A stretch of 64,000 nucleotides of DNA from Octopus sinensis (lineage: Eukaryota), in NCBI RefSeq assembly GCF_006345805.1, contig NC_043010.1:8122001-8186000 (forward strand), in the 5' to 3' direction. The notes beneath the pieces were generated by a model. The model was given only the letters and a program-made list of their open reading frames with translations. It ran no database searches and was not told where the DNA came from. The position numbers and the translations under genes are program-made. This document shows positions 3,596-64,000 of this stretch, piece after piece; position 1 is the first letter of the stretch, and each line of letters starts with the position of its first letter.

Positions 3596-3975
3596 CTCTT
3601 TTTACTCTCTTTACTCTTTTACTCTTTTACTTGTTTCAGTCATTTGACTGCGGCCATGCTGGAGCACTGCCTTTAGTCGAGCCCGGGACTTATTCTATCG
3701 GTCTCTTTTGCCGAACCGCTAAGTGACGGGGATGTAAACACACCAGCATTGGTTGTCAAGCAATGCTAGGGGGACAAACACAGACACACACATATGCATA
3801 TATATACATATATACGACAGGCTTCTTTCAGTTTCCGTCAACCAAATCCACTCTCAAGGCATTGGTCGGCCCGGGCCTATAGCAGAAGACACTTGCCCAA
3901 GATGCCACGCAGTGGGACTGAACCCGCAACCATGTGGTTGGTTAGCAAGCTACTTACCACACAGCCACTCCGCCT
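3596..3975 (-). mobile_element. tRNA-derived SINE family A (~400 bp, internal TA/TG microsatellite, (GTAAAAGA)n tail)
   Basis: Reverse complement of the 8744-9142 copy. Confidence 0.9.
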
Positions 3976-4364: not shown

Positions 4365-4965
4365 CACACACTACTGGATAGAAAGAAAGCCAGAGAAAGA
4401 AAGGGATAAAAGAAAGACAAATGGAAGGTAACTAAAGCAGTAGGGGACTAGAGAGAGAGAGGGGGGATGAGGGAGATAAACAGTTGTATGATGGTTGTTG
4501 ATAAGGAAATTGAGTAGAATCAATATGAAGCGGTTGACAGAGAAGTGAATATTAGAAATGAAAGGGTGGCAGTGATATAGTTACATAATGGTCATTGTTA
4601 AATATATATATATATTATATATTATATATACATATATACACAGATGTGTGTATGTGTGCATGACAGACTTCTACAGTTTTATGTAGAAAACTTTGACTTA
4701 CATTTGTCAATCCGAGCATTTGCATGCAATGGGCTTGAACCTATAAATCCTACCATACACAAGCTTGTCAGAAATTACTATTTTTCCCTGTGTTATTTGT
4801 GCTTGCATCCATACTTAATTTCAACAAAAAAAAATGCATATAAATGTTTCCATTGTAGGTAAGAAATAAAATGTAATCCGTAATATTAATAGGTCTTCAA
4901 ATTAAAAGATTTCATTTTTTTTTTGAAAAGGTCAAAAAAAAAAAGAAATTAACTAACTAACTCAC

Positions 4966-7287
4966 CTGATGTGTCCCCTTCTTCAGCGTTTGGCTATGAA
5001 TTTCTATGATTGATTGTGTCCTGCTTTGACTTGACTCCTGCTTGGAGGACATTTGTTTAGCACATAAATATTCAGTTTGTCTGTTTTCATCCATAAGATT
5101 GTTTGATGGTTCTAAAACTGTCCGATGAATGGCATTTCGTTGGTTGCTTCTCCTAACAATGCACACCGTTATTGAAATAACTAACAAAACAGATACTGTC
5201 ACTGCTGCCACTATGATTATGATAAAGAGGTTGATATGTATTTTGGCATCTGATTGCAAATGCACTGCTGTCAACAGCTTGGATGTGGTATTACTAACAG
5301 ATAATGTCAAGGATAAGGTAGTTGTTGCTGATAAAACAGGTGTACCACTATCTTTGACCGATAGCTCAAGATTATACGTTCCTGCATCATTTTGGTAGAC
5401 TGTTCGTGAGAAGGACAAAACACCAGTGTATGGATTAACTTTAAATAACATTCTACCATTACCTCCAAATATTTCATATCTCAGAAAAGCATTCTGACGA
5501 CTGTCTCTATCAGAAGCTCTCAGAACTGTAATGTCATTTTTGCTTTGAGGTTGGTAGTAAACATCAAGGCTGAAAGGGTCTACACTGGGAAAAATAAAGT
5601 AAGGGGCATTGTCATTTTCATCCATAACTTCAACTATAACCTTTGCTGTGTTGTTTAATGAAGGAGTTCCATTGTCTCTTACTAAAACTTTAAATTCATA
5701 CACCTCCTGCTGTTCATGGTCTAATGGCTGAGTAGTTGAGATAAATCCAAAATTTGAGATTTGAAATGGGAGAATGCGTTTATTACTTCCTAATAATGAG
5801 TAAGACAGTTGACCTCCAGAACCCAAATCTGGGTCAGTGGCATTGATGAATCCCACGGGGAAATCAGTTTTTTCATTTTCATAGGTAAGAAACTTAAAGG
5901 TATCTTTAGTAAAGTGAGGTTGTACATCATTTGCATCCATAACTTTAATAAAAAATCTTTTTTCTGTCTTTAAAGGCGGAGATCCGTGATCTTCACAAGT
6001 AATTACGAAATCTAGTTTGTTTTTAGTTTCTCTATCAACAGTAGCTTTTACTATTACCTTATATCTTTTTTCACCAAGGCCCTTTAATTGTAGGTTTTCA
6101 TGAAATAATTTACAAGTTACTTTGCCATTGTTCCCTATGTCATTGTCAGTAACTTTGACATAAGCAATAAAACTGCCAACTTCAGTTTCCTCAGATATGA
6201 TGGCTGTATTTCCAGTTAACTCTGAAAAGTTAACATCTATTGTAGGAGCATTATTTTGTTTGTCCATAACATTTACCAATACAGTTGCTATTGAACTGAG
6301 AGGGGGGATTCCTCCGTCTCTAGCTTCAATAAACAACTTGTAAGTTTTCTTCACTTGTTTGAATTTTTCATCTAAAAATATCTCACCAGTATTTTCATTC
6401 AATTTGAAATAAGATTTGGCAGTATCGGATGTTTTTGAACTGAAGTGAAAGGAAATTTTACCATTTCTATTGGCATCTAAATCATTTGCAGACAATATTA
6501 CAATTGGTGTCCTTTTTAGAGTTCTATTATTAATAGTAACATAATATATACTCTGGGCAAAAACCGGTTGGTTATCATTGATGTCGCTGACTGTTATTTG
6601 AACATTCAAAACACCTTCTTTTGGTGGAGAACCACCATCTTTGGCAATAACTTGTAACATGTAAGTGTCTTTTTTCTCTCTGTCTAATTTATTTTCTAAA
6701 GTAATTCCAAGAGAGTATGATCCGTCGGCTCTTTTAGAAACAGCTAGCTTAAATGGGTTATGCTCACTATTTTTCAACTCATAGGTGATCTGAGAATTTA
6801 ATATACCAACATCGCTATCAATAGCATTGGGTATTGATTTAGTCATTCCTTTCCCATCCCCTTCATCAAACTGAACATTGATTTGTTTGACAGGAAACTG
6901 AGGCTGATGGTCATTGACGTCTTCTATTATTACTTTGATTTCTAATATCTTAATAAAAGATTTTCTTTTTCGTACTGCAATATCTACCATTTTAAAACAC
7001 TCAGTATTGTATTTACAAAGAGACTCAGCATCCAGCGGTTGAGAAGTGTACAATTTTCCTCTTTCAGAGACATTGAATAACTGAGAACTGCCTGTAATAT
7101 CTTTTTGTAGTTGGCTGAATCGTATCGAACTGGGGTCATTGAAAGATACAGTTTCCATCAAATGTGTGTTAACGCCAATATCCCCAAGATAAGTACCAGG
7201 TTGGCTACCTTCTTTAACATGGTATGTAAAATCTACACACAGGCATGTATGTAGATAAAACAATACCAAACAAGCAGTAATCCGCAT
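4966..7287 (-). CDS. PCDH: Protocadherin, large coding exon: signal peptide, EC1-EC6, TM helix, proximal cytoplasmic tail (774 codons to the donor; 776 aa if the donor is read through)
   Basis: 776-aa ORF 4957-7287. Signal peptide MRITACLVLFYLHTCLC. Cadherin motifs DVNDHQP, LDRE, DINDNQP, VDRE, DANDVQP, LDHE, DENDNAP and AxDxGxP. EC1 Cys-X5-Cys (CKYNTEC), typical of protocadherins. TM FIIIIVAAVTVSVLLVISITVCIV then RR. Phase-0 donor CAG|GTGAGT at 4966/4965. Acceptor TTTTCTTTTTCTTTTTCAG| at 7351/7350. Symbol is family-level only. Confidence 0.97.
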
Positions 7288-8331
7288 ATCTCCATAAACG
7301 TGAGAGCAAAAATATTGAAAGATGTTTCAGTGTTGAAAGGTTAATAAGCTCTGAAAAAGAAAAAGAAAATTCATACAATTACACATACAGAAAATAATTC
7401 AGAAGCTGATATATATGTAATACATTTGAGAAAATATCTTTACTGTAGATGACTTATATGGTAATGAAAAATGCTCTTTCACAATAAGAAGGGAAGAAAT
7501 GTACTAACATTATCAAAAAGAATTTTAATTAAACAACACTAAATTTATAGGTTTTAGCTGCCTTAATATAATAAAAAAAAATATATATATATACATCACA
7601 CAATAGCAATAGTGAGCTGAAATTTGATGAAAAAAAAAATAAATAAAATACATGCATACACACACACATAACATTCATAAGATCTAAGCAAGTGAAATCA
7701 TGCAAAGAGGAAAAGAAAAAAAAAACCTATAAAAAGACGACCAGCGAAGAGACTTGTTAATAGAAATTGGATTGGTGTATATTTTTTCATCTTTCTAACA
7801 TTTTTTTCAAGATAGCCACAAAAGGTTGCAAGAGAAACACTAAAATATTAATCTCGTCTTTGAAAAATGTCAAATAAATAACTTTTTCCAAGTTCACTGG
7901 CTTAACAGTAAAAGAAGTGGCACCATGAAGCCTCTAAGGACATAATGAATTATAGATACAACTAGATTCATGACATGAACACAAGATAATGTCAGAAAGT
8001 GTCCTTTCTCTTTCTCTCTCTCTTTCTATCTCCCTCTTCTTCTTCTCTCTAGCTCTTTCAGTGTCTCTTTCTTCACCTTTACTCCAAGTCTCTTTTCTTC
8101 TACACTTGCTTACATTATATCACCACCCCAACACTTAGACCTACCTAATTCAGACTTCTCTTCTTCCTTCTAACAGCTCTGTTGAGTCTCATTTTTCATA
8201 CCCAATAGTAAATATTTTGCCTTTACTTTCCTTCCCAGAAATATTAACCTCCAGCAATTCTAGGTGAACATTATCTGTAAGAACTACACTAGGTTATCAC
8301 TACTGCCCTCCCTGTCTCCCACCACACACAC

Positions 8332-8368
<37 letters not shown>

Positions 8369-8743
8369 ACACACACACACATACACACACACTCTCACCT
8401 CCTCACTGCCCAATCACCCACAAACTCTTCAAGAGCTAAAAAGGTGATGGTCACCCACACTACTCTCCAGATGCCAAATTTATTATCTTTACTCAAAATA
8501 AAGAAAGTCTTGGCACCTGAACATTTATCTTCTGGCTTTTAAATGATAAAATGTAAAAATCACTCAAAAGCCATCTTTAATCTTCTGAAATATCGATTTC
8601 TGACATAAGCACAAATTTGGGCGCCGGATAGCATCAATTAGATTGACCCCCCCCCCCCAGTGTTTGACTGGTACTTATTTTATTGTCCCTGATAGAATGA
8701 AGTGTAAAAACCAACCTCGGCAAGACTTGAACCCAGAATATAA

Positions 8744-9142
8744 AGGCGCAGGAGTGGCTGTGTGGTAAGTAGCTTGCTTACCAACCACATGGTTCCGGGT
8801 TCAGTCCCACTGCATGGCACCTTGGGCAAGTGTCTTCTACTATAGCCTCGGGCCAACCAAAGCCTTCTGAGTGGATTTGGTAGACGGAAACTGAAAGAAG
8901 CCCGTCGTATATATGTATATATATATGTGTGTGTGTGTTTGTGTGTCTGTGTTTGTCCCCCTAGCATTGCTTGACAACCGATGCTGGTGTGTCTATGTCC
9001 CCGTAACTTAGCAGTTCGGTGAAAGAGACCGATAGAATAAGTACTGGGCTTACAAAAAAGAATAAGTTCCGGGGTCGAGTTGCTCAATTAAAGGCGGTGC
9101 TCCAGCATGGCCACAGTCAAATGATTGAAACAAGTAAAAGAG
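8744..9142 (+). mobile_element. tRNA-derived SINE family A
   Basis: Head AGGCGCAGGAGTGGCTGTGTGGTAAG (A box) and GGTTCAGTCCC (B box), central GGATTTGGTAGACGGAAACTGAAAGAAGCC, tail GAAACAAGTAAAAGAG. Confidence 0.9.
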
Positions 9143-9559
9143 AAAGAGAGATATATGCAACTATATACAGCATTTTGCCTGCCATTCTAATGATTCACTG
9201 AATCCACCAACCTGAAACATTAAAAATCTTCTATAAATAAATAAATATCTCACATATCTTAATTTTTATATTTCTGAACTCTTTGAAACTAATATTTGTT
9301 TTCTATCGACTTTTTTTCCCTTTTTTCATAAGAATAATTTACCAAAAGGGCTTCTAAAATGGAACAGAAGGTTTATACGCATTTAAAGTGCACAAACAAT
9401 GCACAAATGCAACAAACAATTAAATATAAAAGCAAATATGCATTGTAATTGCATATGAATGTTTTTAAATGTCATTAATCATATTCAAATTTAGAATACA
9501 ACAATAATTCCCTCATAATAATAGAAGACTGAAGGAAAATATTAACTACAAAAGAAAAT

Positions 9560-9844
9560 TAAGAATAATGATGGTGATGGTGGTAGTGGTGGTGGTGGTG
9601 GTAGTGGTGGTGGTGTGGTGGTGGTGGTGCTGGTGGTGGTGGTGGTGATGGTGGTGGCGGTAGTGGTGGTGGTGGTGGTGGTTACTGGTGTGGTGGTGGT
9701 GGTGGTGGTTGGTGGTGGTGGTGGTTGGTGAAGCAGATTTACTCAAGATACAATGAATTTACAATTGTGAAGTTGGAAATAAACAATACACAAGATTCAA
9801 ACAAACAATAGACACAAAATAGATTTCATTATGATCAGGCAAAC

Positions 9845-9893
<49 letters not shown>

Positions 9894-10050
9894 GTAATAA
9901 TAAAAAAGAAGCACATTATGAGAAACTCAAAACCAAAACCAAAGAGATAAAATAATAGTAAATGATCAATAAAACATAATAATGATAATAATAATAATAA
10001 TAATGATGATGATGATGATAATGATGATAATGATGATAATGATAATGATG
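9560..10050. repeat. (GGT)n, (AAT)n and (GAT)n trinucleotide microsatellites
   Basis: Directly visible; source of the poly-His/Thr/Ile ORFs. Confidence 0.95.
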
Positions 10051-10199
10051 ATAATAATTGCATATGTGATGTGGGTACAAAAAAATAGTCACATTTAAAA
10101 AATAATGATAAACAGAGATATATGAAGAGAAAAATTTGCAACAAAAGATATAATTATAGTGCACATAGACAACAAATAAAGAATACAGAAGCAAAATAA

Positions 10200-10562: not shown

Positions 10563-11258
10563 ATATATATGTATGTAGTACATTATATATATGTATGTAC
10601 ATATATATATGTATATGTACATATATATAAATACATACACACTGACACAACACACACACACACACACACAATACAATAATACAATACAATGATAAATAGA
10701 TCAGATAAATAAAGAACAAATGAGATGGTAAAACTATAAACAGATTGTAAAGATAAGGAGATTATCATAGTGATAAACTAACAACTTAAATGAAAATGAA
10801 TTCAGTGTAAAGGATATAGAATGAAGATATTAGAAAGAGGAGAAGGATGGAGTGGAGTGGAGTGGTGGAGGGTGGAAATGCCATACAGATAAATAGAAAC
10901 TAAGCATGAATAAAAAGAATTACATTTTGTAACAAACAGACACAATAAATAAGAATATAATAAACAAAAAAGTAATACACTGAAAATAAAAGGAATAAAC
11001 AACTAATGTTATATATAATGCTAACCAAACAATACATAATGATATGAAGGGAAAAGAACATAGTGTGATATTGCAATTCATATAGCTGGAATATAAAATA
11101 TTAGAAGACAGCCTCAAATGTTTAGAAATAAAATTTTCTACAAAAAATTATTCATACATAATTATATATATATATTATGCAGAATATATGTAATGTGCAT
11201 GAATATACATACATACATGCATACATATATATATACATGCACACACACACATACACAC

Positions 11259-11302
<44 letters not shown>

Positions 11303-11461
11303 TATGTGTGTACACATACACACCCACCCACATATATACATACAGATACATACATATGCATACAAACACATACACATACACACACACATATATATATATA
11401 CACATACATATATAAACATATACATACATATACATACAAACACATACACACATACACATAT

Positions 11462-11492
<31 letters not shown>

Positions 11493-12344
11493 CATACATA
11501 TACATATATAAATAGAAATATACACACATATACATACATAAACGTATACACACATACACACACACACATACACACACACACATTTATGTATGTATCTAAT
11601 GTATATATTGCTGAGAGTTCATGTTGCTATCTGTCAATTTGGAATTCTTTACTATGTTGCTATGCATCATATTTCCAATGTCTGTTCATTCATCTTTGGT
11701 AAAGTTAGCAGCACTGACAATTCTTGGTAATTAAAGTTATTCATTACATGACTAAAATATTTCAATCGCAGAAAATTAAGAAACTAATAAATCATTGATT
11801 ATTGTAAAAAGTGTTATATATAAGTCTGACTGTTATTTGAAATAAAACAGCTGAAAATAGAAAGCTAAAATTTCCATAAGAAATTATGAGTACAGTTCCC
11901 TTAGCACTGCAAGTCCAAGCTTCACATTACATGTGTTATGCAAAATTTCTTTTAAAAGTGTATTTGCATTTAAAATAAACTAAAAGATACATAATTTAAA
12001 GAAAAATTGTTTTTCAGCAATAATTATGCATCAAATTAGTAAGTTTGAGGAAAACTATAATTCAATAAATTTATAGCTAAACAGTGAAGCAGAGAAACTA
12101 TTTGCAGAGAGGACTGCATATTTGAATATGGTTACATATGTAAAATGACATATAATGTAATTTAAGTTAGATATAAATATCCATATATTAGCACAAACAA
12201 GTAACACGCACATTACACAACACACACACACCAACACATATATATATGTCATATGGTATTCAAATATATACTTTTACTCATTTCAGCCATATATACATTT
12301 GTATGGACATATATATATGTAAGTATACACCTATATATATATAG

Positions 12345-13550: not shown

Positions 13551-14186
13551 CACATAAATGTGCTATATTCTATATATGTGTTTGTATGTATGTATATATA
13601 TATATATATATTCACATTGACATGCATCTATAAATCCAGTCTTACACACCACACACCACACACACACTCACACTCACACGCACACACACGCACACATATA
13701 TGTACAGAAAGGAAATCATAAGCATTTCATGTTTACAATTACATATGATGATGCATGTGTGCATTAGGTTACAGACCGGTCAGTGTGTGTGTTTGCATGC
13801 ATGTGTGTGTGTGTGCATGTATGAGAGAGAGAGAGAGAGTGACTGAATATTGGTATGTGTGCATGTGCTTGAATTACTGTGAATGTGCAGGTATGTATTT
13901 TATATGCACATCTATGTATGTATCTATCTAGCTATCTATCACAGATGGAGAGAGAGAGAGAAATAAATGTATCTATATTATATATTTGTGTATGTATGTA
14001 TATACATAAGCATGCATATATACATATATACTCACATTAACATACAACTATAAATACAGTTATACACACACATATATGTATACATATATGCATATATATA
14101 TATACATATATGTGTGTGTATGACTATATTTAAAGTTGTATGTCAATGTGAGTATATGAATATATGTGTGTGTGTGTTTATATATA

Positions 14187-14231
<45 letters not shown>

Positions 14232-14269
14232 ATTATATATATATATGTATGTTATGTATATATGTTATA

Positions 14270-14321
<52 letters not shown>

Positions 14322-14324
14322 ATA

Positions 14325-14377
<53 letters not shown>

Positions 14378-14393
14378 GTATATATATATATAG

Positions 14394-14433
<40 letters not shown>

Positions 14434-14442
14434 ATATATTAT

Positions 14443-14473
<31 letters not shown>

Positions 14474-14504
14474 ACACACACACATACATATATATAATTA
14501 TATA

Positions 14505-14536
<32 letters not shown>

Positions 14537-15740
14537 GTATAGATTGATAGATAGATAGATATTTATATATGTATACACATACATACATATATATATATAT
14601 AGATAGATAGATAGATCTATATGCTTCCATCTAGCCATGCAAACATATATACATACACTCACACATACAAACACATATGTATGTGTCTCACACTTGTATG
14701 TGCAAGTAGTCAACAAACAAGTGTGTGCATGATGCTAACACTCACACATGCATTCATACTCTCTTACCTGCACATTTACATACACACATGTGTTTTTGCA
14801 CACACAGTCATAAATATAACACAAAAGAGATACATGTGATGTGTGCTCATATGCAAAAGTACTTAATAATGACAATATCAAATATATACATAGGAAAAGA
14901 TATTCATACACATATTGACACACACAGACATATACATATACACACATAAATGTTGATGAAGATGATGATGATGATGATGATAATACTGATGATGATAACG
15001 ATGATGCACACACTCACATGCACGCACGCACACACACACATGCACATAAATATTATACAAATTTATTATATTGATATTTACTGTTGAATTTAGTTTAACT
15101 AAATTTCCTTGCTTTCCACTCAAAATAGTTTAATTTACTTAGCATATAAAACCAGTAATTAAGACAAAATGACAAATACACTTGAAATTCAGGGGCATTT
15201 GCAAACTTACAGAATAACTTGATACAACGAAACACTTATTTGAGAAGCTCTTGATATTTGGAGAAGGTAAAAGAACTTTTCTTGAAAGGGAAAATAAAAA
15301 AACTTCAGATTCATGGTACACAAACATACACACACACATGCACGCACACACGGACACACACACTGATATACTCACACACATACACAGATACACATACATG
15401 CACATACATATCAACATATACATGCATACATGTACATACATATATAAACACATATATATATATAAATATACATACACATACATGTATACACATATAGATA
15501 TATACACAAATACATATATAGACACATACATACATTTATATATATATACATACATATTTATATGCATGCATCTATATATACATATATATATATATACACA
15601 CACACACACATACATACACCCATGCACGCACACATATATGTATTTAGTTATATTTACAGCAAAATCTTCAAGTTTTTAAAAAGTATTTGGCTTTCAGCAG
15701 ATTTTCTGAATACATACATACATACATAAATACATACATA
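10200..15740. repeat. Compound (AT)n/(AC)n/(ATAC)n/(AGAT)n microsatellite field in protocadherin intron 1
   Basis: Directly visible, broken by short unique spacers. Confidence 0.95.
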
Positions 15741-18209: not shown

Positions 18210-18383
18210 ATTTATACATATACATACATATGTATATGTGTGTAGGTGTGCATGTCCATTTATCTATCTATCTATCAATCTACCAATCTATCTATATGTA
18301 TGTATGTATGTATACACACACCTATATATAATTACATATATATAATCATATATATATTATTCATACACACACACATATATATT

Positions 18384-18444
<61 letters not shown>

Positions 18445-18666
18445 GTATATATATATATATGTATATATATGTATATATATATTATATATATATATATATA
18501 TATTATATGCATATATATATGTATATATATATGCATATATATGGTATATATATATATGCATATATATGTATATATATATGCATATATATGTATGTATATG
18601 TATATACATACATATATATGCATATATATGTATATACATATATATGCATAGATATATATATTATAA

Positions 18667-18737
<71 letters not shown>

Positions 18738-18740
18738 TGA
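18210..18740. repeat. (AT)n/(ATGT)n then (GATA)n microsatellite
   Basis: Directly visible. Confidence 0.95.
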
Positions 18741-19419
18741 TTTCTCTATTAAAAATTAATCTTCTTACAAAATATAGACTTAACAGTATTAATGCAAATA
18801 TTTTCAGAATATTTGACTTTTCAGGAAAAGTAAAGAATTTTGCTTTGTAGTGGAATATGATGACATTTTAAATATGCTTTAAATTAACACGATTTTTATG
18901 CATTATTCATGTACATTTCCCTTTGTAATAAAGATTTACATGCTTAGAGCAATAAGTGTAAAATATTCTGAATTGAAACGAATGGTGGGTGGAGGAGGGG
19001 GGTATGTCAGAAAGGAAGGAAGGAGGAAATAGAGGGAGAAAAAGAAAGAAAGAAAGAAAGAATGATTGAGAGAGGTGAAGGCAGGGAAAAGGAAAAGGAG
19101 AGAGAGAGAGGGAAAGGAAAAGGAAAAGAAAGAGACTTATCATTCATTTTTAATCAGATACATTAACAAATTCCGCTCAAACACATTATAGGCTAAAAAT
19201 TAATATATATATATATGTATATGTATATGTACATACACACATGCACAAATGTGTGTGTGTGTGTATGTGTGCATGCGTGTGTGTGTGTATGTGTGTGTGT
19301 GTGTATTATACATATCATTAGATATATGAATAATAATTTTGTCTTTAGATGTTAAATACTGTTCTAGTCCATTAAACAGCACCATACTGGTTTAGAAATC
19401 ATTAAATGTTAGGAGGCCA

Positions 19420-19501
19420 GAAATTATTATTATTGTTATTATTATTATTATTATTATCATCATCAATATTATTACTATTATCATTATCATTATTATCATT
19501 T

Positions 19502-19542
<41 letters not shown>

Positions 19543-19645
19543 ATTATTCTCATCATCATCATTACTACTACTTCTACTACCACTGTTTCTACTACTACTA
19601 CTACTACTTGTTACAGTAGCAGTAGTAGTAGTAGTAGTAGTAGTT
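19420..19645. repeat. (ATT)n/(ACT)n/(AGT)n microsatellite in the putative 3' UTR of the upstream gene
   Basis: Directly visible. Confidence 0.9.
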
Positions 19646-19845
19646 TGATCATGATTATAATCAATGTAAGTAAGAACGGACTAGCCAGAGTTTGTTTTTT
19701 CATCCAAGTGGAAACAACATACAAAACAAAAATTTTTCTTTTGAAAAAAAAAAACAATAAAAAAACAAGGCAGAAACAATCGGCAATAACAAACAAAAAA
19801 AAAAGAAAAGAAAAAAGAAAGGATAGCAACTAACTAGAATACTTT

Positions 19846-20123
19846 CTAAGATTCTTCATTTGACGGCAATGCTGGTAGTGGTTTTGAAAAATTAAAACTG
19901 TTTCTTGTTGGTAGTTCCCAGTGCTGTTGAAGAACATTACGGTTGTTACTGTGTAATGGAATAGAGTTTTGATTAGATACACCACTGTAGCTTACATTTT
20001 GACCAATGGCTACCGGACAGGCATATCTGGCATTCATGCCTCCTTCCTTGGGCCTGTTCACCATATGAGGCAAAGATTGGCTGTCCACTTTCACTACCCG
20101 TTCCTTTTGGTAAGCCTTATAAT
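19846..20123 (-). CDS. Terminal coding exon of an upstream gene, probably a protocadherin cytoplasmic tail: (D)YKAYQKERVVKVDSQSLPHM...QHWELPTRNSFNFSKPLPALPSNEES*
   Basis: Acceptor TTTATTTCTACTTTTAG| at 20124/20123, phase 1, then 91 open codons to TAG at 19846. Non-repetitive, coding-like composition, same strand as the protocadherin. Protocadherin identity is inferred from position and orientation only. Confidence 0.75.
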
Positions 20124-20229
20124 CTAAAAGTAGAAATAAAACAAATTTTGGTAAAATGCATCATGATTGAACTGAATGACAATAAAATGATTTTCTTTGT
20201 TTTTAAATTGAATACATGCATATATATAT

Positions 20230-20635
20230 AGGCGCAGGAGTGGCTGTGTGGTAAGTAGCTTGCTACCCAACCACATAGTTCCGGGTTCAGTCTCACTGCG
20301 TGGCATCTTGGGCAAGTGTCTTCTGCTATAGCCCCGGGCCGACCAATGCCTTGTGAGTGGATTTGGCCGACGGAAACTGAAAGAAGCCTGTCGTATATAT
20401 GTATATATATATAAGTGTGTGTGTGTTTGTGTGTCTGTGTTTGTCCCCCTAGCATTGCTTGACAACCGATGCTGGTGTGTTTACGTCCCCGTCACTTAGC
20501 GGTTCGGCAAAGGAGACCGATGGAATAAGTACTGGGCTTACAAAGAATAAGTCCCGGGGTTGATTTGCTCGACTAAAGGCGGTGCTCCAGCATGGCCGCA
20601 GTCAAATGACTGAAACAAGTAAAAGAGTAAAAGAG
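20230..20635 (+). mobile_element. tRNA-derived SINE family A, full length
   Basis: Near-identical to 8744-9142; lies ~105 nt upstream of the 20123 acceptor. Confidence 0.9.
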
Positions 20636-25461: not shown

Positions 25462-25663
25462 TTTTTACTTGTTTCAGTCATTTGACTGCGGCCATGCTGG
25501 AGCACCGCCTTTAGTCGAGCAACTCGACCCCGGGACTTATTCTTTTTGTAAGCCCAGTACTTATTCTATCGGTCTCTTTTTGCCGAACCGCTAAGTGACG
25601 GGGACGTAAACACACCAGCATCGGTTGTCAAGCAATGCTAAGGGAACAAACACAGACACACAA

Positions 25664-25694
<31 letters not shown>

Positions 25695-25866
25695 CATATA
25701 TACGACAGGCTTCTTTCAGTTTCCGTCTACCAAATCCACTCACAAGGCATTGGTCGGCCCAGGGCTATAGCAGAAGACTCTTGCCCAAGATGCCACGCAG
25801 TGGGACTGAACCCGGAACCATGTGGTTGGTTAGCAAGCTACTTACCACACAGCCACTCCTGCGCCT
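25462..25866 (-). mobile_element. tRNA-derived SINE family A, full length
   Basis: Reverse complement of the family A consensus. Confidence 0.9.
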
Positions 25867-26610
25867 AACTTCTAAATATTTTTTAAGACATGTGCAAATC
25901 AAGAATGATTTGGTATGTATTTCAGGCAGATCAACCTACAATAAAGATATTCTCTCACTGATCTGATGGTTTAGATACTGAACACAAGAAATGATGACAG
26001 AATATTCTGTTTTAGGCGTAACTGAACCAAGTTACCATTACCATATTGTAAGTTTTATATCAAATTATTTCAAAAATTTTATCTATTATGTACAACAGAA
26101 GCAGTATTAAGTTAGCCATCTGTGTATCATACTTAATGCAAATACATCATGGAAAGTCAAATTGACTGCAGTATTTTTCCAGAGATAATATCTGTTTTGT
26201 ATGTTCTGTGTTAAATTGCACAAAAATATATCAAAAGCAGATGAAAATTGTCTAGAAGTGCAGGTGAAGATGCTAGATGCACATTTCTTCCTCTTTGAGC
26301 TTCGTCAGCAGCAAACACAGACTAAGGTCTTATAACTATGACTAATATGTTTCTTTATTAGCCACACAGGGCTGAACACAGAGGGGAGAAATTACTAAGT
26401 AGAGCTTTTCTTTTTGGAGAAAAAAAAAAAGGGTAGGTTTTCAATCAAAAGGGATCGTAAGAAAAAAAAAAGAAAAAACGATCAATAGGGATCAAGTGTC
26501 ACAGAAATGTAATGATGTAAAGTGTAAAGGCAGAAACAGATAAGGTTTATCCGTGGAAAGAAGAGCCTACGGAAAAGACCATGGTAACCTTGGTCAATAA
26601 TGTCACATGT

Positions 26611-29295: not shown

Positions 29296-29701
29296 CTCTC
29301 TTTACTCTTTTACTTGTTTCAGTCATTTGACTGCGGCCATGCTGGAGCACCGCCTTTAGTCGAGTAAATCGACCCCGGGACTTATTCTTTTTGTAAGCCC
29401 AGTACTTATTCTATCGGTCTCTTTTTGCCGAACCGCTAAGTGACGGGGACGCAAACACACCAGCATCGGTTGTCAAGCAATGCTAGGGGGACAAACACAG
29501 ACACACAAACACACATATACATATATATACATATATACGACAGGCTTCTTTCAGTTTCCGTCTCCCAAATCCACTCACAAGGCATTGGTCAGCCCGGGGC
29601 TATAGCAGAAGACACTTGCCCAAGATGCCACGCAGTGGGACTGAACCCGGAACCATGTGGCTGGTTAGCAAGCCACTTACCACACAGCCACTCCTGCGCC
29701 T
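29296..29701 (-). mobile_element. tRNA-derived SINE family A, full length
   Basis: Reverse complement of the family A consensus. Confidence 0.9.
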
Positions 29702-30628
29702 ATATTCTGCTTATTTTTTTCTATATATTTCTTCCTTTTCATTTTCTCTTATTTCATTAATATCTACAGAGAGAGAAGTCTAGTCCGTCCCAAGATGACT
29801 GAATTCTCTGATCAAGTTCGAGTTACTGATCTCTAATTTCAATTTGTGTAAATCCTAAATATGGGAATACAAAAAGAAAATGAGCAATCAACCACAGGTT
29901 ATTCTAGAAGATATCAGTCAAATGAAAGAAGCAATGGAACAACATGCAGAAACATACTAAAATGTAAAGTGACATTGAATGTTGAGAAATATATTATCAT
30001 TTAACGTCCATTTTTCCATGCTGACATGGGTCAGACAGAATTTGTTGAGGCAGATTTTCTATGGCGGACACAGAGGCCTTTCTTATAATCAACCTTCAAA
30101 TGTCTCTAGACTTGGTCATTTTTCTCGATAGCTAGACATGTTTTCCGTGGAAGATTGGAAATGTACTTCATTACTTCTATGATGGTCATTCTCATCATCT
30201 ACAGCCAGCACATGATCTCAAGACAATGATACATACAAGCACACACACACACACCATATATATATAGTTGTATATGTATGCATGTATGTATGGATGGGTG
30301 GATGGATGGATAGATGGATGGGTGTATGTATGCATGTATGGATAGTTGAATGGATGGATGTATACAAATACATATATAAGGCACAGGCATGGCTGTGTAG
30401 GGGGTGTAACTCAGTAAATCATCTTTGCCAATAAATAAATGAAGGACAATTAAATGAGTCAGACAAATTATCGGTGTTGATATAAATGACTAAAATTTCT
30501 AAAAGGTATTGCTCCACTATGGCCAGAGTCCAGGGATCGAAACAAGTAAAAGAATGATAATCCATATACTATTATCATTGGTCCTTGTTTGAAACTAAAT
30601 AAATTGTATATGGTGACTTATACACGAT

Positions 30629-31045
30629 AGGCGCAGGAGTGGCTGTGTGGTAAGTAGCTTGCTAACCATCCACATGGTTGCGGGTTCAGTCCCACTGTGT
30701 GGCATCTTGGGGAAGTGTCTTCTGCTATAGCCCCAGGCCGACCAATGCCTTGTGAGTGGATTTGGTAGACGGAAACTGAAAGAAGCCTGTCGTATATATG
30801 TATATATATATCTGTGTGTGTGTGTATGTTTGTGTGTCTGTGTTTGTCCCCCTAGCATTGTTTGACAACCGATGCTGGTGTGTTTGCGTCCCCGTCACTT
30901 TGCGGTTCGGCAAAAGTACCGATAGAATAAGTACTGGGCTTCCAAAGAATAAGTCCCGGGGTCGATTTACTCGACTAAAGGTGGTGCTCCAGCATGGCCG
31001 CAGTCAAATGACTGAAACAAGTAAAAGAGTAAAAGAGTAAAAGAG
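30629..31045 (+). mobile_element. tRNA-derived SINE family A, full length
   Basis: Family A head and (GTAAAAGA)3 tail. Confidence 0.9.
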
Positions 31046-32599: not shown

Positions 32600-33165
32600 G
32601 GTATGACCTCACAGCCCAGGATATTAATCGTCTGAAAGCCATTCAGTGACGTGCAACCAAGAGAATACCTTCCATCAGGCTTTTGCCATATTCTGAACGC
32701 CTGGACATGGACACATTGAAACTCCGACGTCTGGCAGCTGACTTGGCAGACACCCATAAAATTATTAATCTTCTTACAAACAGTAACTCTGAGCACCTTT
32801 TCAAACTCCACCTGTCTAACACCCGTGGACATATTTACAAAGTCAGAAAACAGCACAGCTCCCATGACTTTCAGAAACATTTTTTCACGCTAAGAGTTTC
32901 TGAAGCATGGAACAAACTGTCAGCATCAGTTGTTAGTTGTCGGAGCACTGCATCCTTCAAAACTTCCATGCTTCCTGAGATTTGCCAACAGTACACCTTG
33001 ATTTTCCCCCTCCATACACACGCAAGCATGTATCTGACTCATACACAGTTCACTTTCCAGACATTTGTACATTACTGCATATGCTTTATGCGCACTTTTT
33101 GACAGGTTGTGGTGCACCTGAGCATTGTATACAATAATTTCATTATTATTATCATTATTATTATT
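32600..33165 (+). mobile_element. 5'-truncated CR1/L2-group LINE 3' end
   Basis: DINRL-AIQ-RATKRIP...PYSERL...TLKLRRLAADL...NTRGHIYKVRKQ...KHFFTLRVSEAWNKL is typical of the CR1/L2 ORF2 C-terminus; (ATT)n tail. Confidence 0.88.
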
Positions 33166-63630: not shown

Positions 63631-64000
63631 TTTATTAACTTTTACGAAAGATTGACGTTGAAGTTTGGTCTTGCTCTGATGACCTTTTCCTTATGAAAGT
63701 TAATAAAGTGTGTACTTTACTAAAAAGTATTGAGTAAATCCTTCCTGTTTAATGTTAAATTGTTTTCATTTGTAACTTGACATAAAAGCACGCATTAGTG
63801 TGTGTGTGTGTGGTGTGTGTGTGTGTGTGTGTGTATGAGAGAGAGACATAGAACAAATTAGTCTTCAAATTCGACTTCAAAAAAATGTTCGATGGGTGCT
63901 GTAATTTACTTTCCATTATAAATTTGGAATTAGGAAATCTATATAGAAAGTTCAGAAATCAAAATAATGTCTTTTTTAAAACAAAGAAGCCACACACACA

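What the first reader, a model, noticed from the sequence alone, without database searches (positions are those of the whole stretch)
19846..20123. Orphan terminal coding exon with no ectodomain exon in the 44 kb upstream
Seen: a clean acceptor, 91 open codons and a stop only 3.5 kb from the next protocadherin's putative TSS (head-to-tail), but no cadherin-encoding ORF from 20.1 to 64 kb. Three explanations: (a) the tail exon of a tandem paralog with a >44-kb intron; (b) a constant exon shared by several distant ectodomain exons, like vertebrate clustered Pcdh, although octopus genes are described as independent units; (c) an ectodomain-less, tail-only gene. Option (b) or (c) would be new biology.
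Basis: partly seen in the sequence, partly recalled or inferred. Interest (0 to 1): 0.72.

Follow-up and report, generated by a model that had tools for sequence, protein, structure and literature searches.

The report
Last exon of a neighbouring protocadherin
The "orphan" exon is a real but ordinary last coding exon of an octopus-type protocadherin gene whose large adhesion-domain exon lies beyond the window, separated by the very long introns seen in all six inspected relatives with this tail type.

Summary
On the minus strand a pyrimidine tract and AG precede 2 nt, 91 open codons and TAG (20123-19846). No other cadherin-like sequence exists in the window apart from the ORF at 4957-7287.

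ORF length alone means nothing here: 112 ORFs in the window are at least 91 codons. Homology shows the exon is real. A profile built without the window sequence hits it at E=5.8e-21.

Relatives occur in Octopus vulgaris, O. bimaculoides, O. sinensis and Argonauta hians. All share W-x-L/M-P-x-x-N-S/T-F...KPLPA-x-P and a phase-1 acceptor at the same alignment position.

The tail is the C-terminus of true protocadherins, for example O. vulgaris QBA31120.1 (930 aa). The gene plan is an ectodomain exon (donor CAG|GT, phase 0), a small exon 2 (DSGHGW...HYEELP, phase 1), then the tail.

An O. vulgaris array carries four ectodomain exons, four exon 2s and four tails. An Argonauta relative has introns of 35.8 and 12.4 kb, and another gene spans 144 kb.

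The window's own protocadherin ORF ends in CAG|GTGAGT, with no tail exons in the 4.9 kb that follow.

Verdict: explanation (a), a tandem paralogue with long introns. A shared constant exon or a tail-only gene is unsupported, but neither is strictly excluded without transcripts.

The parts
19849..20123 (-). Terminal coding exon of a protocadherin gene: 2 nt of a split codon plus 91 codons. Encodes (D?)YKAYQKERVV...HWELPTRNSFNFSKPLPALPSNEES.
   Evidence: Translation. Tail HMM built without this sequence: 72 bits, E=5.8e-21. Best relatives: P0001 at 40% identity, E=3.7e-12; C-terminus of O. vulgaris protocadherin P0020, aa 850-925.
19846..19848 (-). Stop codon TAG, at the same place relative to the KPLPALP motif as in relatives (4-9 residues after the motif).
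20124..20146 (-). 3' splice site: pyrimidine-rich tract (73% Y in positions -25..-4) plus AG (20125-20124). Intron phase is 1.
   Evidence: Same phase and same alignment position in all 12 tail exons inspected.
19864..19917 (-). Conserved C-terminal motif W-E-L-P-T-R-N-S-F-N-F-S-K-P-L-P-A-L-P. KPLPALP fits the class I SH3-ligand consensus [RK]xxPxxP (inference from general knowledge).
   Evidence: Invariant columns W, P, N, F, K, P, L, P, A, P in alignments A1/A2.
4966..7287 (-). Coding part of the ectodomain/TM exon of the NEXT protocadherin gene, head-to-tail downstream (774 codons, ATG at 7287). It is not the partner of the tail exon.
   Evidence: Six Pfam Cadherin domains, E=2.3e-69. 62% identical to O. 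vulgaris protocadherin P0020 and 59% to the Argonauta L014 exon 1.
4960..4965 (-). 5' splice site CAG|GTGAGT (GT at 4965-4964), phase 0. The 'V-S-stop' at the end of the 776-aa ORF is intron read-through.
   Evidence: The same Q(CAG)|GTRRG donor followed by an in-frame stop occurs in four O. vulgaris genes and in Argonauta L014.
7351..7375 (-). Candidate 3' splice site (ttttctttttctttttCAG) 63 nt upstream of the ATG of the downstream protocadherin. It implies an upstream 5' non-coding exon.
   Evidence: A similar Py-tract plus CAG sits just upstream of the ATG in three O. vulgaris genes of L015. Inference only, not transcript-verified.
20224..20520 (.). SINE-like interspersed repeat copy inside the intron, ending about 100 nt upstream of the acceptor. 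Context only, not part of the gene product.
   Evidence: Self-blastn: six copies at 91-94% identity in the window.

Best explanation
The segment 20123-19846(-) is the last (third coding) exon of an octopod protocadherin gene. That gene lies head-to-tail upstream of the protocadherin at 7287-4966.

Proposed mechanism. Transcription starts upstream of a large ectodomain/TM exon located beyond window position 64000. That exon ends in a conserved Q(CAG)|GT donor (phase 0). It is spliced to a small exon 2 that encodes ...DSGHGW...HYEELP and ends in a phase-1 donor. Exon 2 is then spliced to this exon's phase-1 acceptor. The junction codon would be GAT (Asp) if the donor contributes G, as it does in every relative.

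The exon supplies the C-terminal 91 residues of the cytoplasmic domain. This region is probably disordered and ends in the conserved WxLPxRNSF-x2-SKPLPALP motif. That motif is probably a proline-rich (SH3-type) docking site for intracellular partners.

The 44 kb without cadherin sequence is simply intron. It is populated by SINE-like and low-complexity repeats.

What is shown:
- homology of the exon to protocadherin tails;
- conserved splice phase;
- the three-exon plan in relatives, with one tail per gene;
- very long introns in genes of this tail type.

What is inferred:
- that the partner exons lie beyond 64 kb;
- the docking function of the motif.
For: 1. Family membership. The single-sequence HMMER scan found three homologous terminal exons. 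Profile searches found members in O. vulgaris, O. bimaculoides, O. sinensis and Argonauta hians. An HMM that excludes the window sequence hits the exon at E=5.8e-21.

2. The tail belongs to protocadherins.
- O. vulgaris protocadherin QBA31120.1 (P0020, 930 aa) runs from signal peptide through six cadherin repeats and the TM segment to ...DTGHNWREGSTEHYEELAG-FCPRE...WNLPTGNSFTTYSKPLPAVPKVTHT.
- O. bimaculoides P0015 and P0018 run from the protocadherin TM segment to the tail.

3. Conserved gene plan and phases.
- All 12 tail acceptors inspected are phase 1 at the same alignment column.
- Exon 1 donors are CAG|GT, phase 0. Exon 2 acceptors are phase 0 and exon 2 donors are phase 1.

4. One tail per gene. 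O. vulgaris L015 carries four head-to-tail genes, each with its own exon 1, exon 2 and tail. The tail of gene B lies 5.4 kb upstream of gene C's ectodomain exon, which is the layout seen in the window.

5. Long introns are normal for this tail type.
- Argonauta L014: 35.8 kb + 12.4 kb, with no other cadherin exon in between.
- Argonauta P0011: the gene spans 144 kb.
- O. vulgaris L011: no cadherin exon in the 35 kb upstream of exon 2.
- L012 and L013: none within 10 kb.

6. The window's own protocadherin exon ends in CAG|GTGAGT and has no exon 2 or tail in the 4.9 kb downstream. Long 3' introns therefore also apply at this locus.

7. Literature. Octopus protocadherins are multi-exonic, head-to-tail, fully duplicated genes that do not splice to shared final exons (PMC9068888; PMC6339937).
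Against: The partner exons were not seen. No exon-2-like sequence was detected anywhere in 20.1-64 kb with two HMMs (best E=0.46 and 2.3), although exon 2 lies only 0.3-12 kb upstream of the tail in the relatives examined. So either intron 2 alone exceeds 44 kb, or exon 2 of this divergent subtype is unrecognisable or absent.

The window's tail is a divergent member, at most 40% identical to any relative, and lacks the DVIDLKS block. No ortholog and no transcript evidence for this exact exon could be obtained. It is absent from the protein collection searched.
Confidence: 0.83

Rival explanations
1. Shared constant exon. Several distant upstream ectodomain exons, each with its own promoter, splice to this one tail, as in vertebrate clustered Pcdh alpha/gamma.
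For: Only permissive evidence exists. The partner exon or exons are off-window, so the number of donors that use 20123 is unknown. No exon 2 was detected in 44 kb, which leaves the upstream architecture unresolved.
Against: In the only array that could be read in full (O. vulgaris L015), the ratio of ectodomain exons to exon 2s to tails is 4:4:4, and adjacent paralogues have distinct tails. Argonauta L014 has a single ectodomain exon for its exon 2 and tail, with no other cadherin exon inside the 48 kb. The tail family is highly diversified (30-50% identity between paralogues), as expected if tails duplicate with their genes. Published chromosome-scale analyses state that cephalopods do not use shared final exons (PMC9068888). 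There is no similarity to the vertebrate constant region (no Pfam Cadherin_tail hit).
Confidence: 0.05
2. Tail-only gene. A small cytoplasmic protein is made from local short exons plus this exon, without any cadherin ectodomain.
For: Public annotations contain many short stand-alone models of this family, 80-277 aa. Examples are O. vulgaris CAI9732409.1, O. bimaculoides XP_014774873.1 and XP_014772563.1, O. sinensis XP_036355490.1 and Argonauta GAB1604377.1.
Against: Those models are truncations. Conservation continues upstream of their annotated Met to a phase-0 acceptor of exon 2 (LTLPH...VTSGV). XP_036355490.1 falls in the same 90%-identity cluster as O. vulgaris P0022, whose C-terminal part is encoded by gene C of L015, a complete gene. 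P0019 and P0011 are the 3' end of full-length protocadherin P0020. In the window, the ORF extension upstream of the acceptor has no ATG, and the first in-frame ATG is codon 20 of the exon. At least one octopus annotation pipeline capped introns at 20 kb (PMC9795677), which would orphan such tails.
Confidence: 0.05
3. Relic exon. This is the surviving last exon of a protocadherin gene whose upstream exons were deleted or rearranged away, and it is no longer part of a functional mRNA.
For: No exon 2 or ectodomain exon lies within 44 kb. The exon is absent from all annotated proteins searched. Pseudogene-like protocadherin fragments are reported in cephalopod clusters (PMC9068888).
Against: The closest relative is only 40% identical, so the exon is old. 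Even so it keeps an open 91-codon frame in AT-rich DNA, an intact Py-tract/AG acceptor in the conserved phase, every invariant residue of the family motif, and a stop at the family-typical position. Its GC content is 41% against 28% in the flank. Together these indicate continuing purifying selection.
Confidence: 0.07

Closest known systems
Octopod protocadherin genes with three coding exons, e.g. O. vulgaris protocadherin QBA31120.1 / A0A411DZ02 (Styfhals et al. 2019) and the four tandem genes at OX597827.1:7.04-7.08 Mb
   Same: Homologous C-terminal exon with the same terminal motif, the same phase-1 acceptor at the same alignment position, a stop a few residues after KPLPA-x-P, and a head-to-tail position a few kb upstream of the next ectodomain exon.
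   Different: The window's tail is a divergent subtype, at most 40% identical. It lacks the DVIDLKS block and has a 2-residue rather than 3-residue spacer before KPLPALP, like the Logan contig protein P0001. Its exon 2 and ectodomain exon are more than 44 kb away rather than 2-5 kb as in the compact array.
Argonauta hians 'protocadherin beta-12-like isoform X1' GAB1604374.1 locus (BAAFZT010000037.1:24.76-24.83 Mb)
   Same: Same tail type (W-x-L-P...NSF...KPLP). The ectodomain exon is 59% identical to the window's neighbouring protocadherin. The ectodomain exon is separated from the tail by 48 kb of intron, which is a direct precedent for the gap seen here.
   Different: In Argonauta, exon 2 is recognisable 12.4 kb upstream of the tail. 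No exon 2 was recognisable in 44 kb of the window.
Vertebrate clustered protocadherin (Pcdh alpha/gamma) constant exons
   Same: Small 3' exons encode the distal cytoplasmic domain of protocadherins whose ectodomain, TM segment and proximal tail are encoded by one large exon. They lie within a tandem array.
   Different: Vertebrate constant exons are shared by all variable exons of a cluster and sit at the 3' end of the array. Here every gene examined has private 3' exons, interleaved with the ectodomain exons. There is no sequence similarity (no Pfam Cadherin_tail hit).
Vertebrate delta-protocadherin cytoplasmic motifs (CM2 'DSGKGDS'-type; recalled from memory, not tested)
   Same: Exon 2 of the octopod genes carries D-S-G-H-G-W-S-E/V-G, which resembles the DSGKGDS core.
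   Different: Styfhals et al. report no vertebrate CM1-3 motifs in O. vulgaris protocadherins (PMC6339937). That motif lies in exon 2, which was not found in this window.

Membership tests
Octopod protocadherin terminal (tail) exon | Significant sequence similarity to the C-terminus of bona fide protocadherins | tested here: met
   An HMM of 12 relatives, built without the window sequence, scores 72 bits, E=5.8e-21. tblastn of protocadherin P0020 aa 850-925 hits 20088-19864. P0001 gives E=3.7e-12.
Octopod protocadherin terminal (tail) exon | C-terminal motif W-x-[LM]-P-x-x-N-[ST]-F-x(2,3)-K-P-L-P-A-x-P followed within about 10 residues by the stop | tested here: met
   The window has WELPTRNSFNFSKPLPALPSNEES*. 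All invariant columns of A1/A2 are present.
Octopod protocadherin terminal (tail) exon | Phase-1 3' splice site at the conserved alignment position | tested here: met
   12 of 12 tail exons, the window included, have yAG|NN plus codons at the same column.
Octopod protocadherin terminal (tail) exon | Same-strand exon 2 (DSGHGW...HYEELP, phase 0 to 1) and an ectodomain exon upstream | tested here: inconclusive
   Neither was found in 20.1-64 kb. Relatives show that they can lie 36-144 kb away. Sequence beyond the window is needed.
Octopod protocadherin terminal (tail) exon | Position in a head-to-tail protocadherin array | tested here: met
   The next protocadherin ectodomain exon is on the same strand, 12.56 kb downstream. 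The same layout occurs in L015.
Octopod protocadherin terminal (tail) exon | Spliced into a protocadherin mRNA | not testable with these tools
   No transcript data are available for this locus. A paralogue is shown as a full-length protein sequence, P0020, which I take to be transcript-derived from its Styfhals et al. 2019 origin.
Vertebrate-type shared constant exon | One set of 3' exons used by many variable ectodomain exons | tested here: not met
   Tested only in relatives. L015 has a 4:4:4 ratio with distinct tails. L014 has a 1:1:1 ratio. This was not testable for the window exon itself.
Vertebrate-type shared constant exon | Homology to the Pcdh alpha/gamma constant region (Pfam Cadherin_tail) | tested here: not met
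   No Pfam family hits the tail peptide or its relatives, even at E up to 10.
Stand-alone tail-only gene | Own initiation codon, with coding conservation that starts there | tested here: not met
   There is no ATG in the ORF extension upstream of the acceptor, and the first Met is codon 20. In relatives, conservation extends 5' of the annotated Met to a splice acceptor.

The most novel reading that the evidence does not exclude
The exon could serve as a common 3' end for more than one upstream ectodomain exon in a long-intron sub-array. That would be a local, vertebrate-like variable/constant arrangement in an octopus, contrary to the published view. A second possibility is a tail-only transcript from an internal promoter that yields a soluble protocadherin intracellular-domain protein. 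The failure to find exon 2 within 44 kb leaves the upstream architecture of this divergent tail subtype open.
Probability: 0.06. Interest if true: 0.75.

Novelty: new member of a known kind. Interest (0 to 1): 0.14.

Why it matters
For biology it matters little. The exon fits the published picture of octopus protocadherins as independently duplicated, multi-exon, head-to-tail genes.

The practical value is for annotation.
- Genes with the WNLP...KPLPALP tail type have 3' introns of tens to more than 100 kb.
- As a result, public annotations of four octopod genomes contain orphan 'hypothetical protein' models that are really protocadherin tails.
- They also contain ectodomain models that end in intron read-through (V-S-stop or V-R-stop after the conserved CAG|GT donor), and at least one fusion of two neighbouring genes.
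- The exon 2 and tail profiles built here would allow these genes to be completed, and would allow tails to be counted against ectodomain exons genome-wide.

The conserved terminal motif is an untested candidate docking site. It could guide work on octopus protocadherin signalling.

Tried and rejected
- A word-indexed protein search with the 91-aa peptide found nothing. The full HMMER scan was needed.
- Two of its five hits (P0002, P0003) are bacterial low-complexity repeat proteins and were discarded.
- Exact look-up of the 776-aa read-through ORF, of P0016 and of P0017 found no record.
- Pfam gave no family for the tail or for exon 2.
- A MAFFT alignment suggested that the juxtamembrane tail of the window's own protocadherin (SIIEIHSQ) might align with the DVIDLKS block. 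An HMM test rejected this (score -2.4 bits).
- Searches for exon 2 in the window gave only noise. These were tblastn, a 3-sequence HMM and regexes, and a 10-sequence HMM.
- A search for a shared promoter-like 9-mer upstream of six protocadherin ATGs found nothing present in four or more of them.
- Pfam on six non-repetitive stray ORFs of the window gave nothing.
- Albertin et al. 2015 is not held in the library, so its statements are cited through PMC6339937 and PMC9068888.
- The supplement of PMC6339937 lists octopus-specific motifs only for EC1, EC5, EC6, TM and PP1. None corresponds to this tail motif.
- I considered a WIRS (WAVE-binding) motif for RNSF, but the hydrophobic first position (recalled from memory) is not met, so it is not claimed.

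Full report
**1. The observation**

On the minus strand the sequence reads tttgttttatttctacttttAG|AT TAT AAG GCT .... The exon starts at 20123 with two bases of a split codon. Ninety-one sense codons follow (20121-19849) and then TAG (19848-19846).

The peptide is YKAYQKERVVKVDSQSLPHMVNRPKEGGMNARYACPVAIGQNVSYSGVSNQNSIPLHSNNRNVLQQHWELPTRNSFNFSKPLPALPSNEES.

The only cadherin-coding sequence in the window is the 776-aa ORF at 4957-7287(-), which has six Pfam Cadherin domains. tblastn with that protein and a profile of seven octopod ectodomain exons find nothing else, in particular nothing in 20.1-64 kb.

The description is therefore correct. An open frame of this length is not informative by itself, however. 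The window has 112 stop-to-stop ORFs of 91 codons or more, most of them in microsatellite-like DNA.

**2. Is it a real exon?**

The word-indexed protein search found nothing. A full HMMER scan of 1.8 billion representatives found three short proteins (P0001, P0004, P0005) that end in ...PW[DN][LM]P.[RQ]N[ST]F...KPLPA[LI]P.

These three lie on short Logan contigs that are genomic DNA. In each, the conserved peptide is preceded by a pyrimidine tract and AG at the same alignment position and in the same phase.

A profile of these sequences retrieved members from four species:
- O. vulgaris (P0006, P0007);
- O. bimaculoides (P0008);
- Argonauta hians (P0009).

A tail HMM built without the window sequence hits the window ORF 19849-20160(-) at 72 bits, E=5.8e-21. 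It hits nothing else in the window. Exon GC is 41% against 28% in the downstream kilobase. The exon is real and belongs to a conserved family.

**3. What family is it?**

In O. vulgaris (L011, L012) and Argonauta (L013) the tail exon is preceded, 0.6-4.8 kb upstream, by a small exon. That exon encodes ...VTSGV.K...M[IL][LM]V..FN...[DE]SG.GW.E...HYE.L.G and ends in a phase-1 donor.

Conservation runs 5' of the annotated Met to a phase-0 acceptor. The short 'hypothetical protein' models are therefore 5'-truncated.

A profile search with exon 2 plus tail and a listing of the 90%-identity clusters link the family to protocadherins:
- O. bimaculoides P0015 and P0018 start in the protocadherin TM segment and run to the tail.
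- O. vulgaris protocadherin QBA31120.1 (P0020, 930 aa; I take it to be transcript-derived, from Styfhals et al. 2019) is a complete protocadherin. It ends ...DTGHNWREGSTEHYEELAGFCPRE...DVIDLKS...WNLPTGNSFTTYSKPLPAVPKVTHT.
- P0020's ectodomain is 62% identical to the window's 776-aa ORF.

**4. Gene plan and arrangement in relatives**

O. vulgaris L015 (OX597827.1, 7.04-7.08 Mb) holds four head-to-tail protocadherin genes in 35 kb. Each gene has its own three parts:
- an ectodomain exon that ends CAG|GT[GA]A[GA]A, phase 0, with an in-frame stop soon after, so the ORF reads through as ...Q-V-R-stop;
- an exon 2, with a phase-0 acceptor and a phase-1 donor;
- a tail exon, with a phase-1 acceptor.

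The ratio is 4:4:4 and the tails differ between neighbours. The tail of gene B lies 5.4 kb upstream of gene C's ectodomain exon. A tail exon sitting just upstream of the next protocadherin is therefore the normal head-to-tail layout.

Intron length varies greatly. In Argonauta L014 an ectodomain exon (7766-10162, 59% identical to the window's ORF) is followed by introns of 35.8 kb and 12.4 kb before exon 2 and the tail. No other cadherin exon lies in between.

The Argonauta counterpart of P0020 (P0011) spans 144 kb. O. vulgaris L011 has no cadherin exon in the 35 kb upstream of exon 2.

In every locus I could inspect, tails of the WNLP...KPLPALP type (the window's type) belong to long-intron genes. 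The compact L015 array carries a variant tail (...PMTS.FTS..KPPLP.VPKV).

**5. Back to the window**

The 776-aa ORF ends ...CAT CAG|GTGAGT TAG. This is a consensus donor in phase 0, at the position conserved in the five relatives. The final V-S-stop is intron read-through.

No exon 2 or tail follows in the remaining 4.9 kb. The window's own protocadherin therefore also has long 3' introns.

A pyrimidine tract plus CAG lies 63 nt upstream of its ATG, as in three of the L015 genes. This implies a 5' non-coding exon upstream.

The tail exon at 20123 has a phase-1 acceptor, so it cannot take a phase-0 exon 1 donor directly. An exon 2 is expected, but two HMMs, tblastn and motif regexes found none in 20.1-64 kb. 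Either intron 2 exceeds 44 kb, or exon 2 of this divergent subtype is not recognisable. This is the one loose end.

**6. Interpretation**

Option (a) is best supported (confidence 0.83): this is the last exon of the upstream tandem paralogue, separated from its partners by long introns.

Option (b), a shared constant exon, is contradicted by the 1:1:1 organisation in relatives, by the diversity of the tails, and by the published chromosome-scale analyses (PMC9068888).

Option (c), a tail-only gene, rests only on truncated annotation models:
- One of them (O. sinensis XP_036355490.1) falls in the same 90%-identity cluster as O. vulgaris P0022, whose C-terminal part is encoded by the complete gene C of L015.
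- At least one octopus annotation pipeline capped introns at 20 kb (PMC9795677). That cap would orphan such tails.

A relic exon is unlikely. The frame, the acceptor, the motif and the stop position are all intact even though the closest relative is at most 40% identical.

**7. Function (inference)**

The exon encodes the distal cytoplasmic tail. It is low in complexity and rich in S, N and P, so it is probably disordered.

Its invariant end, W-x-L-P-x-R-N-S-F-x2-S-K-P-L-P-A-L-P, contains a class I SH3-ligand consensus ([RK]xxPxxP). It is the most plausible functional element, probably a docking site for an intracellular adaptor. This was not tested.

**8. Novelty**

This is an ordinary member of a known kind. 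The useful by-products concern annotation: orphan tails, read-through stops, and one fused two-gene model in O. vulgaris (P0022).

Noticed in passing
window 4957-4968 (-): The 776-aa protocadherin ORF does not end at a true stop. It ends ...CAT CAG|GTGAGT TAG, a consensus phase-0 donor at a position conserved in four O. vulgaris genes and one Argonauta gene. The last two codons and the stop are intron read-through. Its exon 2 and tail are not in the 4.9 kb downstream.
   Followed up: yes
window 7351-7375 (-): A pyrimidine tract plus CAG lies 63 nt upstream of the protocadherin ATG (7287). A similar feature sits just upstream of the ATG in three O. vulgaris genes of L015. This suggests the big ectodomain exon is not the first exon and that a 5' non-coding exon lies upstream. 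That differs from vertebrate variable exons, which are first exons.
   Followed up: partly
L015 10001-25366 (O. vulgaris OX597827.1; protein CAI9732433.1, P0022): The annotated 1785-aa 'putative protocadherin beta-18' is a fusion of two adjacent genes. It joins gene B's exon 1 and exon 2 to an acceptor inside gene C's signal-peptide codons, and it skips gene B's own tail exon (14923-15255).
   Followed up: yes
L011, L012, L013, L014; proteins P0006-P0019: At least a dozen 'hypothetical/uncharacterized protein' models of 80-277 aa in O. vulgaris, O. bimaculoides, O. sinensis and Argonauta hians are orphaned 3' ends of protocadherin genes. In Argonauta L014, the 818-aa ectodomain ORF next to the 217-aa model is not listed as a called gene at all.
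   Followed up: partly
window 3698-3971, 8738-9032, 20224-20520, 25569-25867, 29414-29705, 30627-30914: A SINE-like interspersed repeat of about 295 bp is present in six copies at 91-94% identity, on both strands, plus several older fragments. One copy ends about 100 nt upstream of the tail exon's acceptor.
   Followed up: partly
window 9.8-19.8 kb and scattered (e.g. 11097-11699, 14054-14502, 18246-18755, 19396-19830): Very AT-rich DNA (GC 0.09-0.29) made of microsatellite or low-complexity repeats generates many long spurious ORFs of 120-200 codons with CVCV/IYIY-type 'peptides'. ORF length is a poor guide to coding in this genome.
   Followed up: partly
alignment of exon 2 peptides (L011 35349-35507, L012 9962-10129, L013 9932-10117, L014 45948-46145, L015 x4): Exon 2 of octopod protocadherins carries a strongly conserved [DE]-S-G-H-G-W-S-x-G-x-x-G-H-Y-E-E-L-P block. 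It resembles, from memory, the DSGKGDS core of vertebrate delta-protocadherin CM2. Styfhals et al. reported finding no vertebrate CM motifs.
   Followed up: no
window 32650-33099 (+): A 150-codon ORF of normal composition (GC 0.43) encodes ...LPYSERLDMDTLKLRRLAADLADTHKI.... It looks like the C-terminal region of a retroelement ORF, but Pfam gave no hit.
   Followed up: partly
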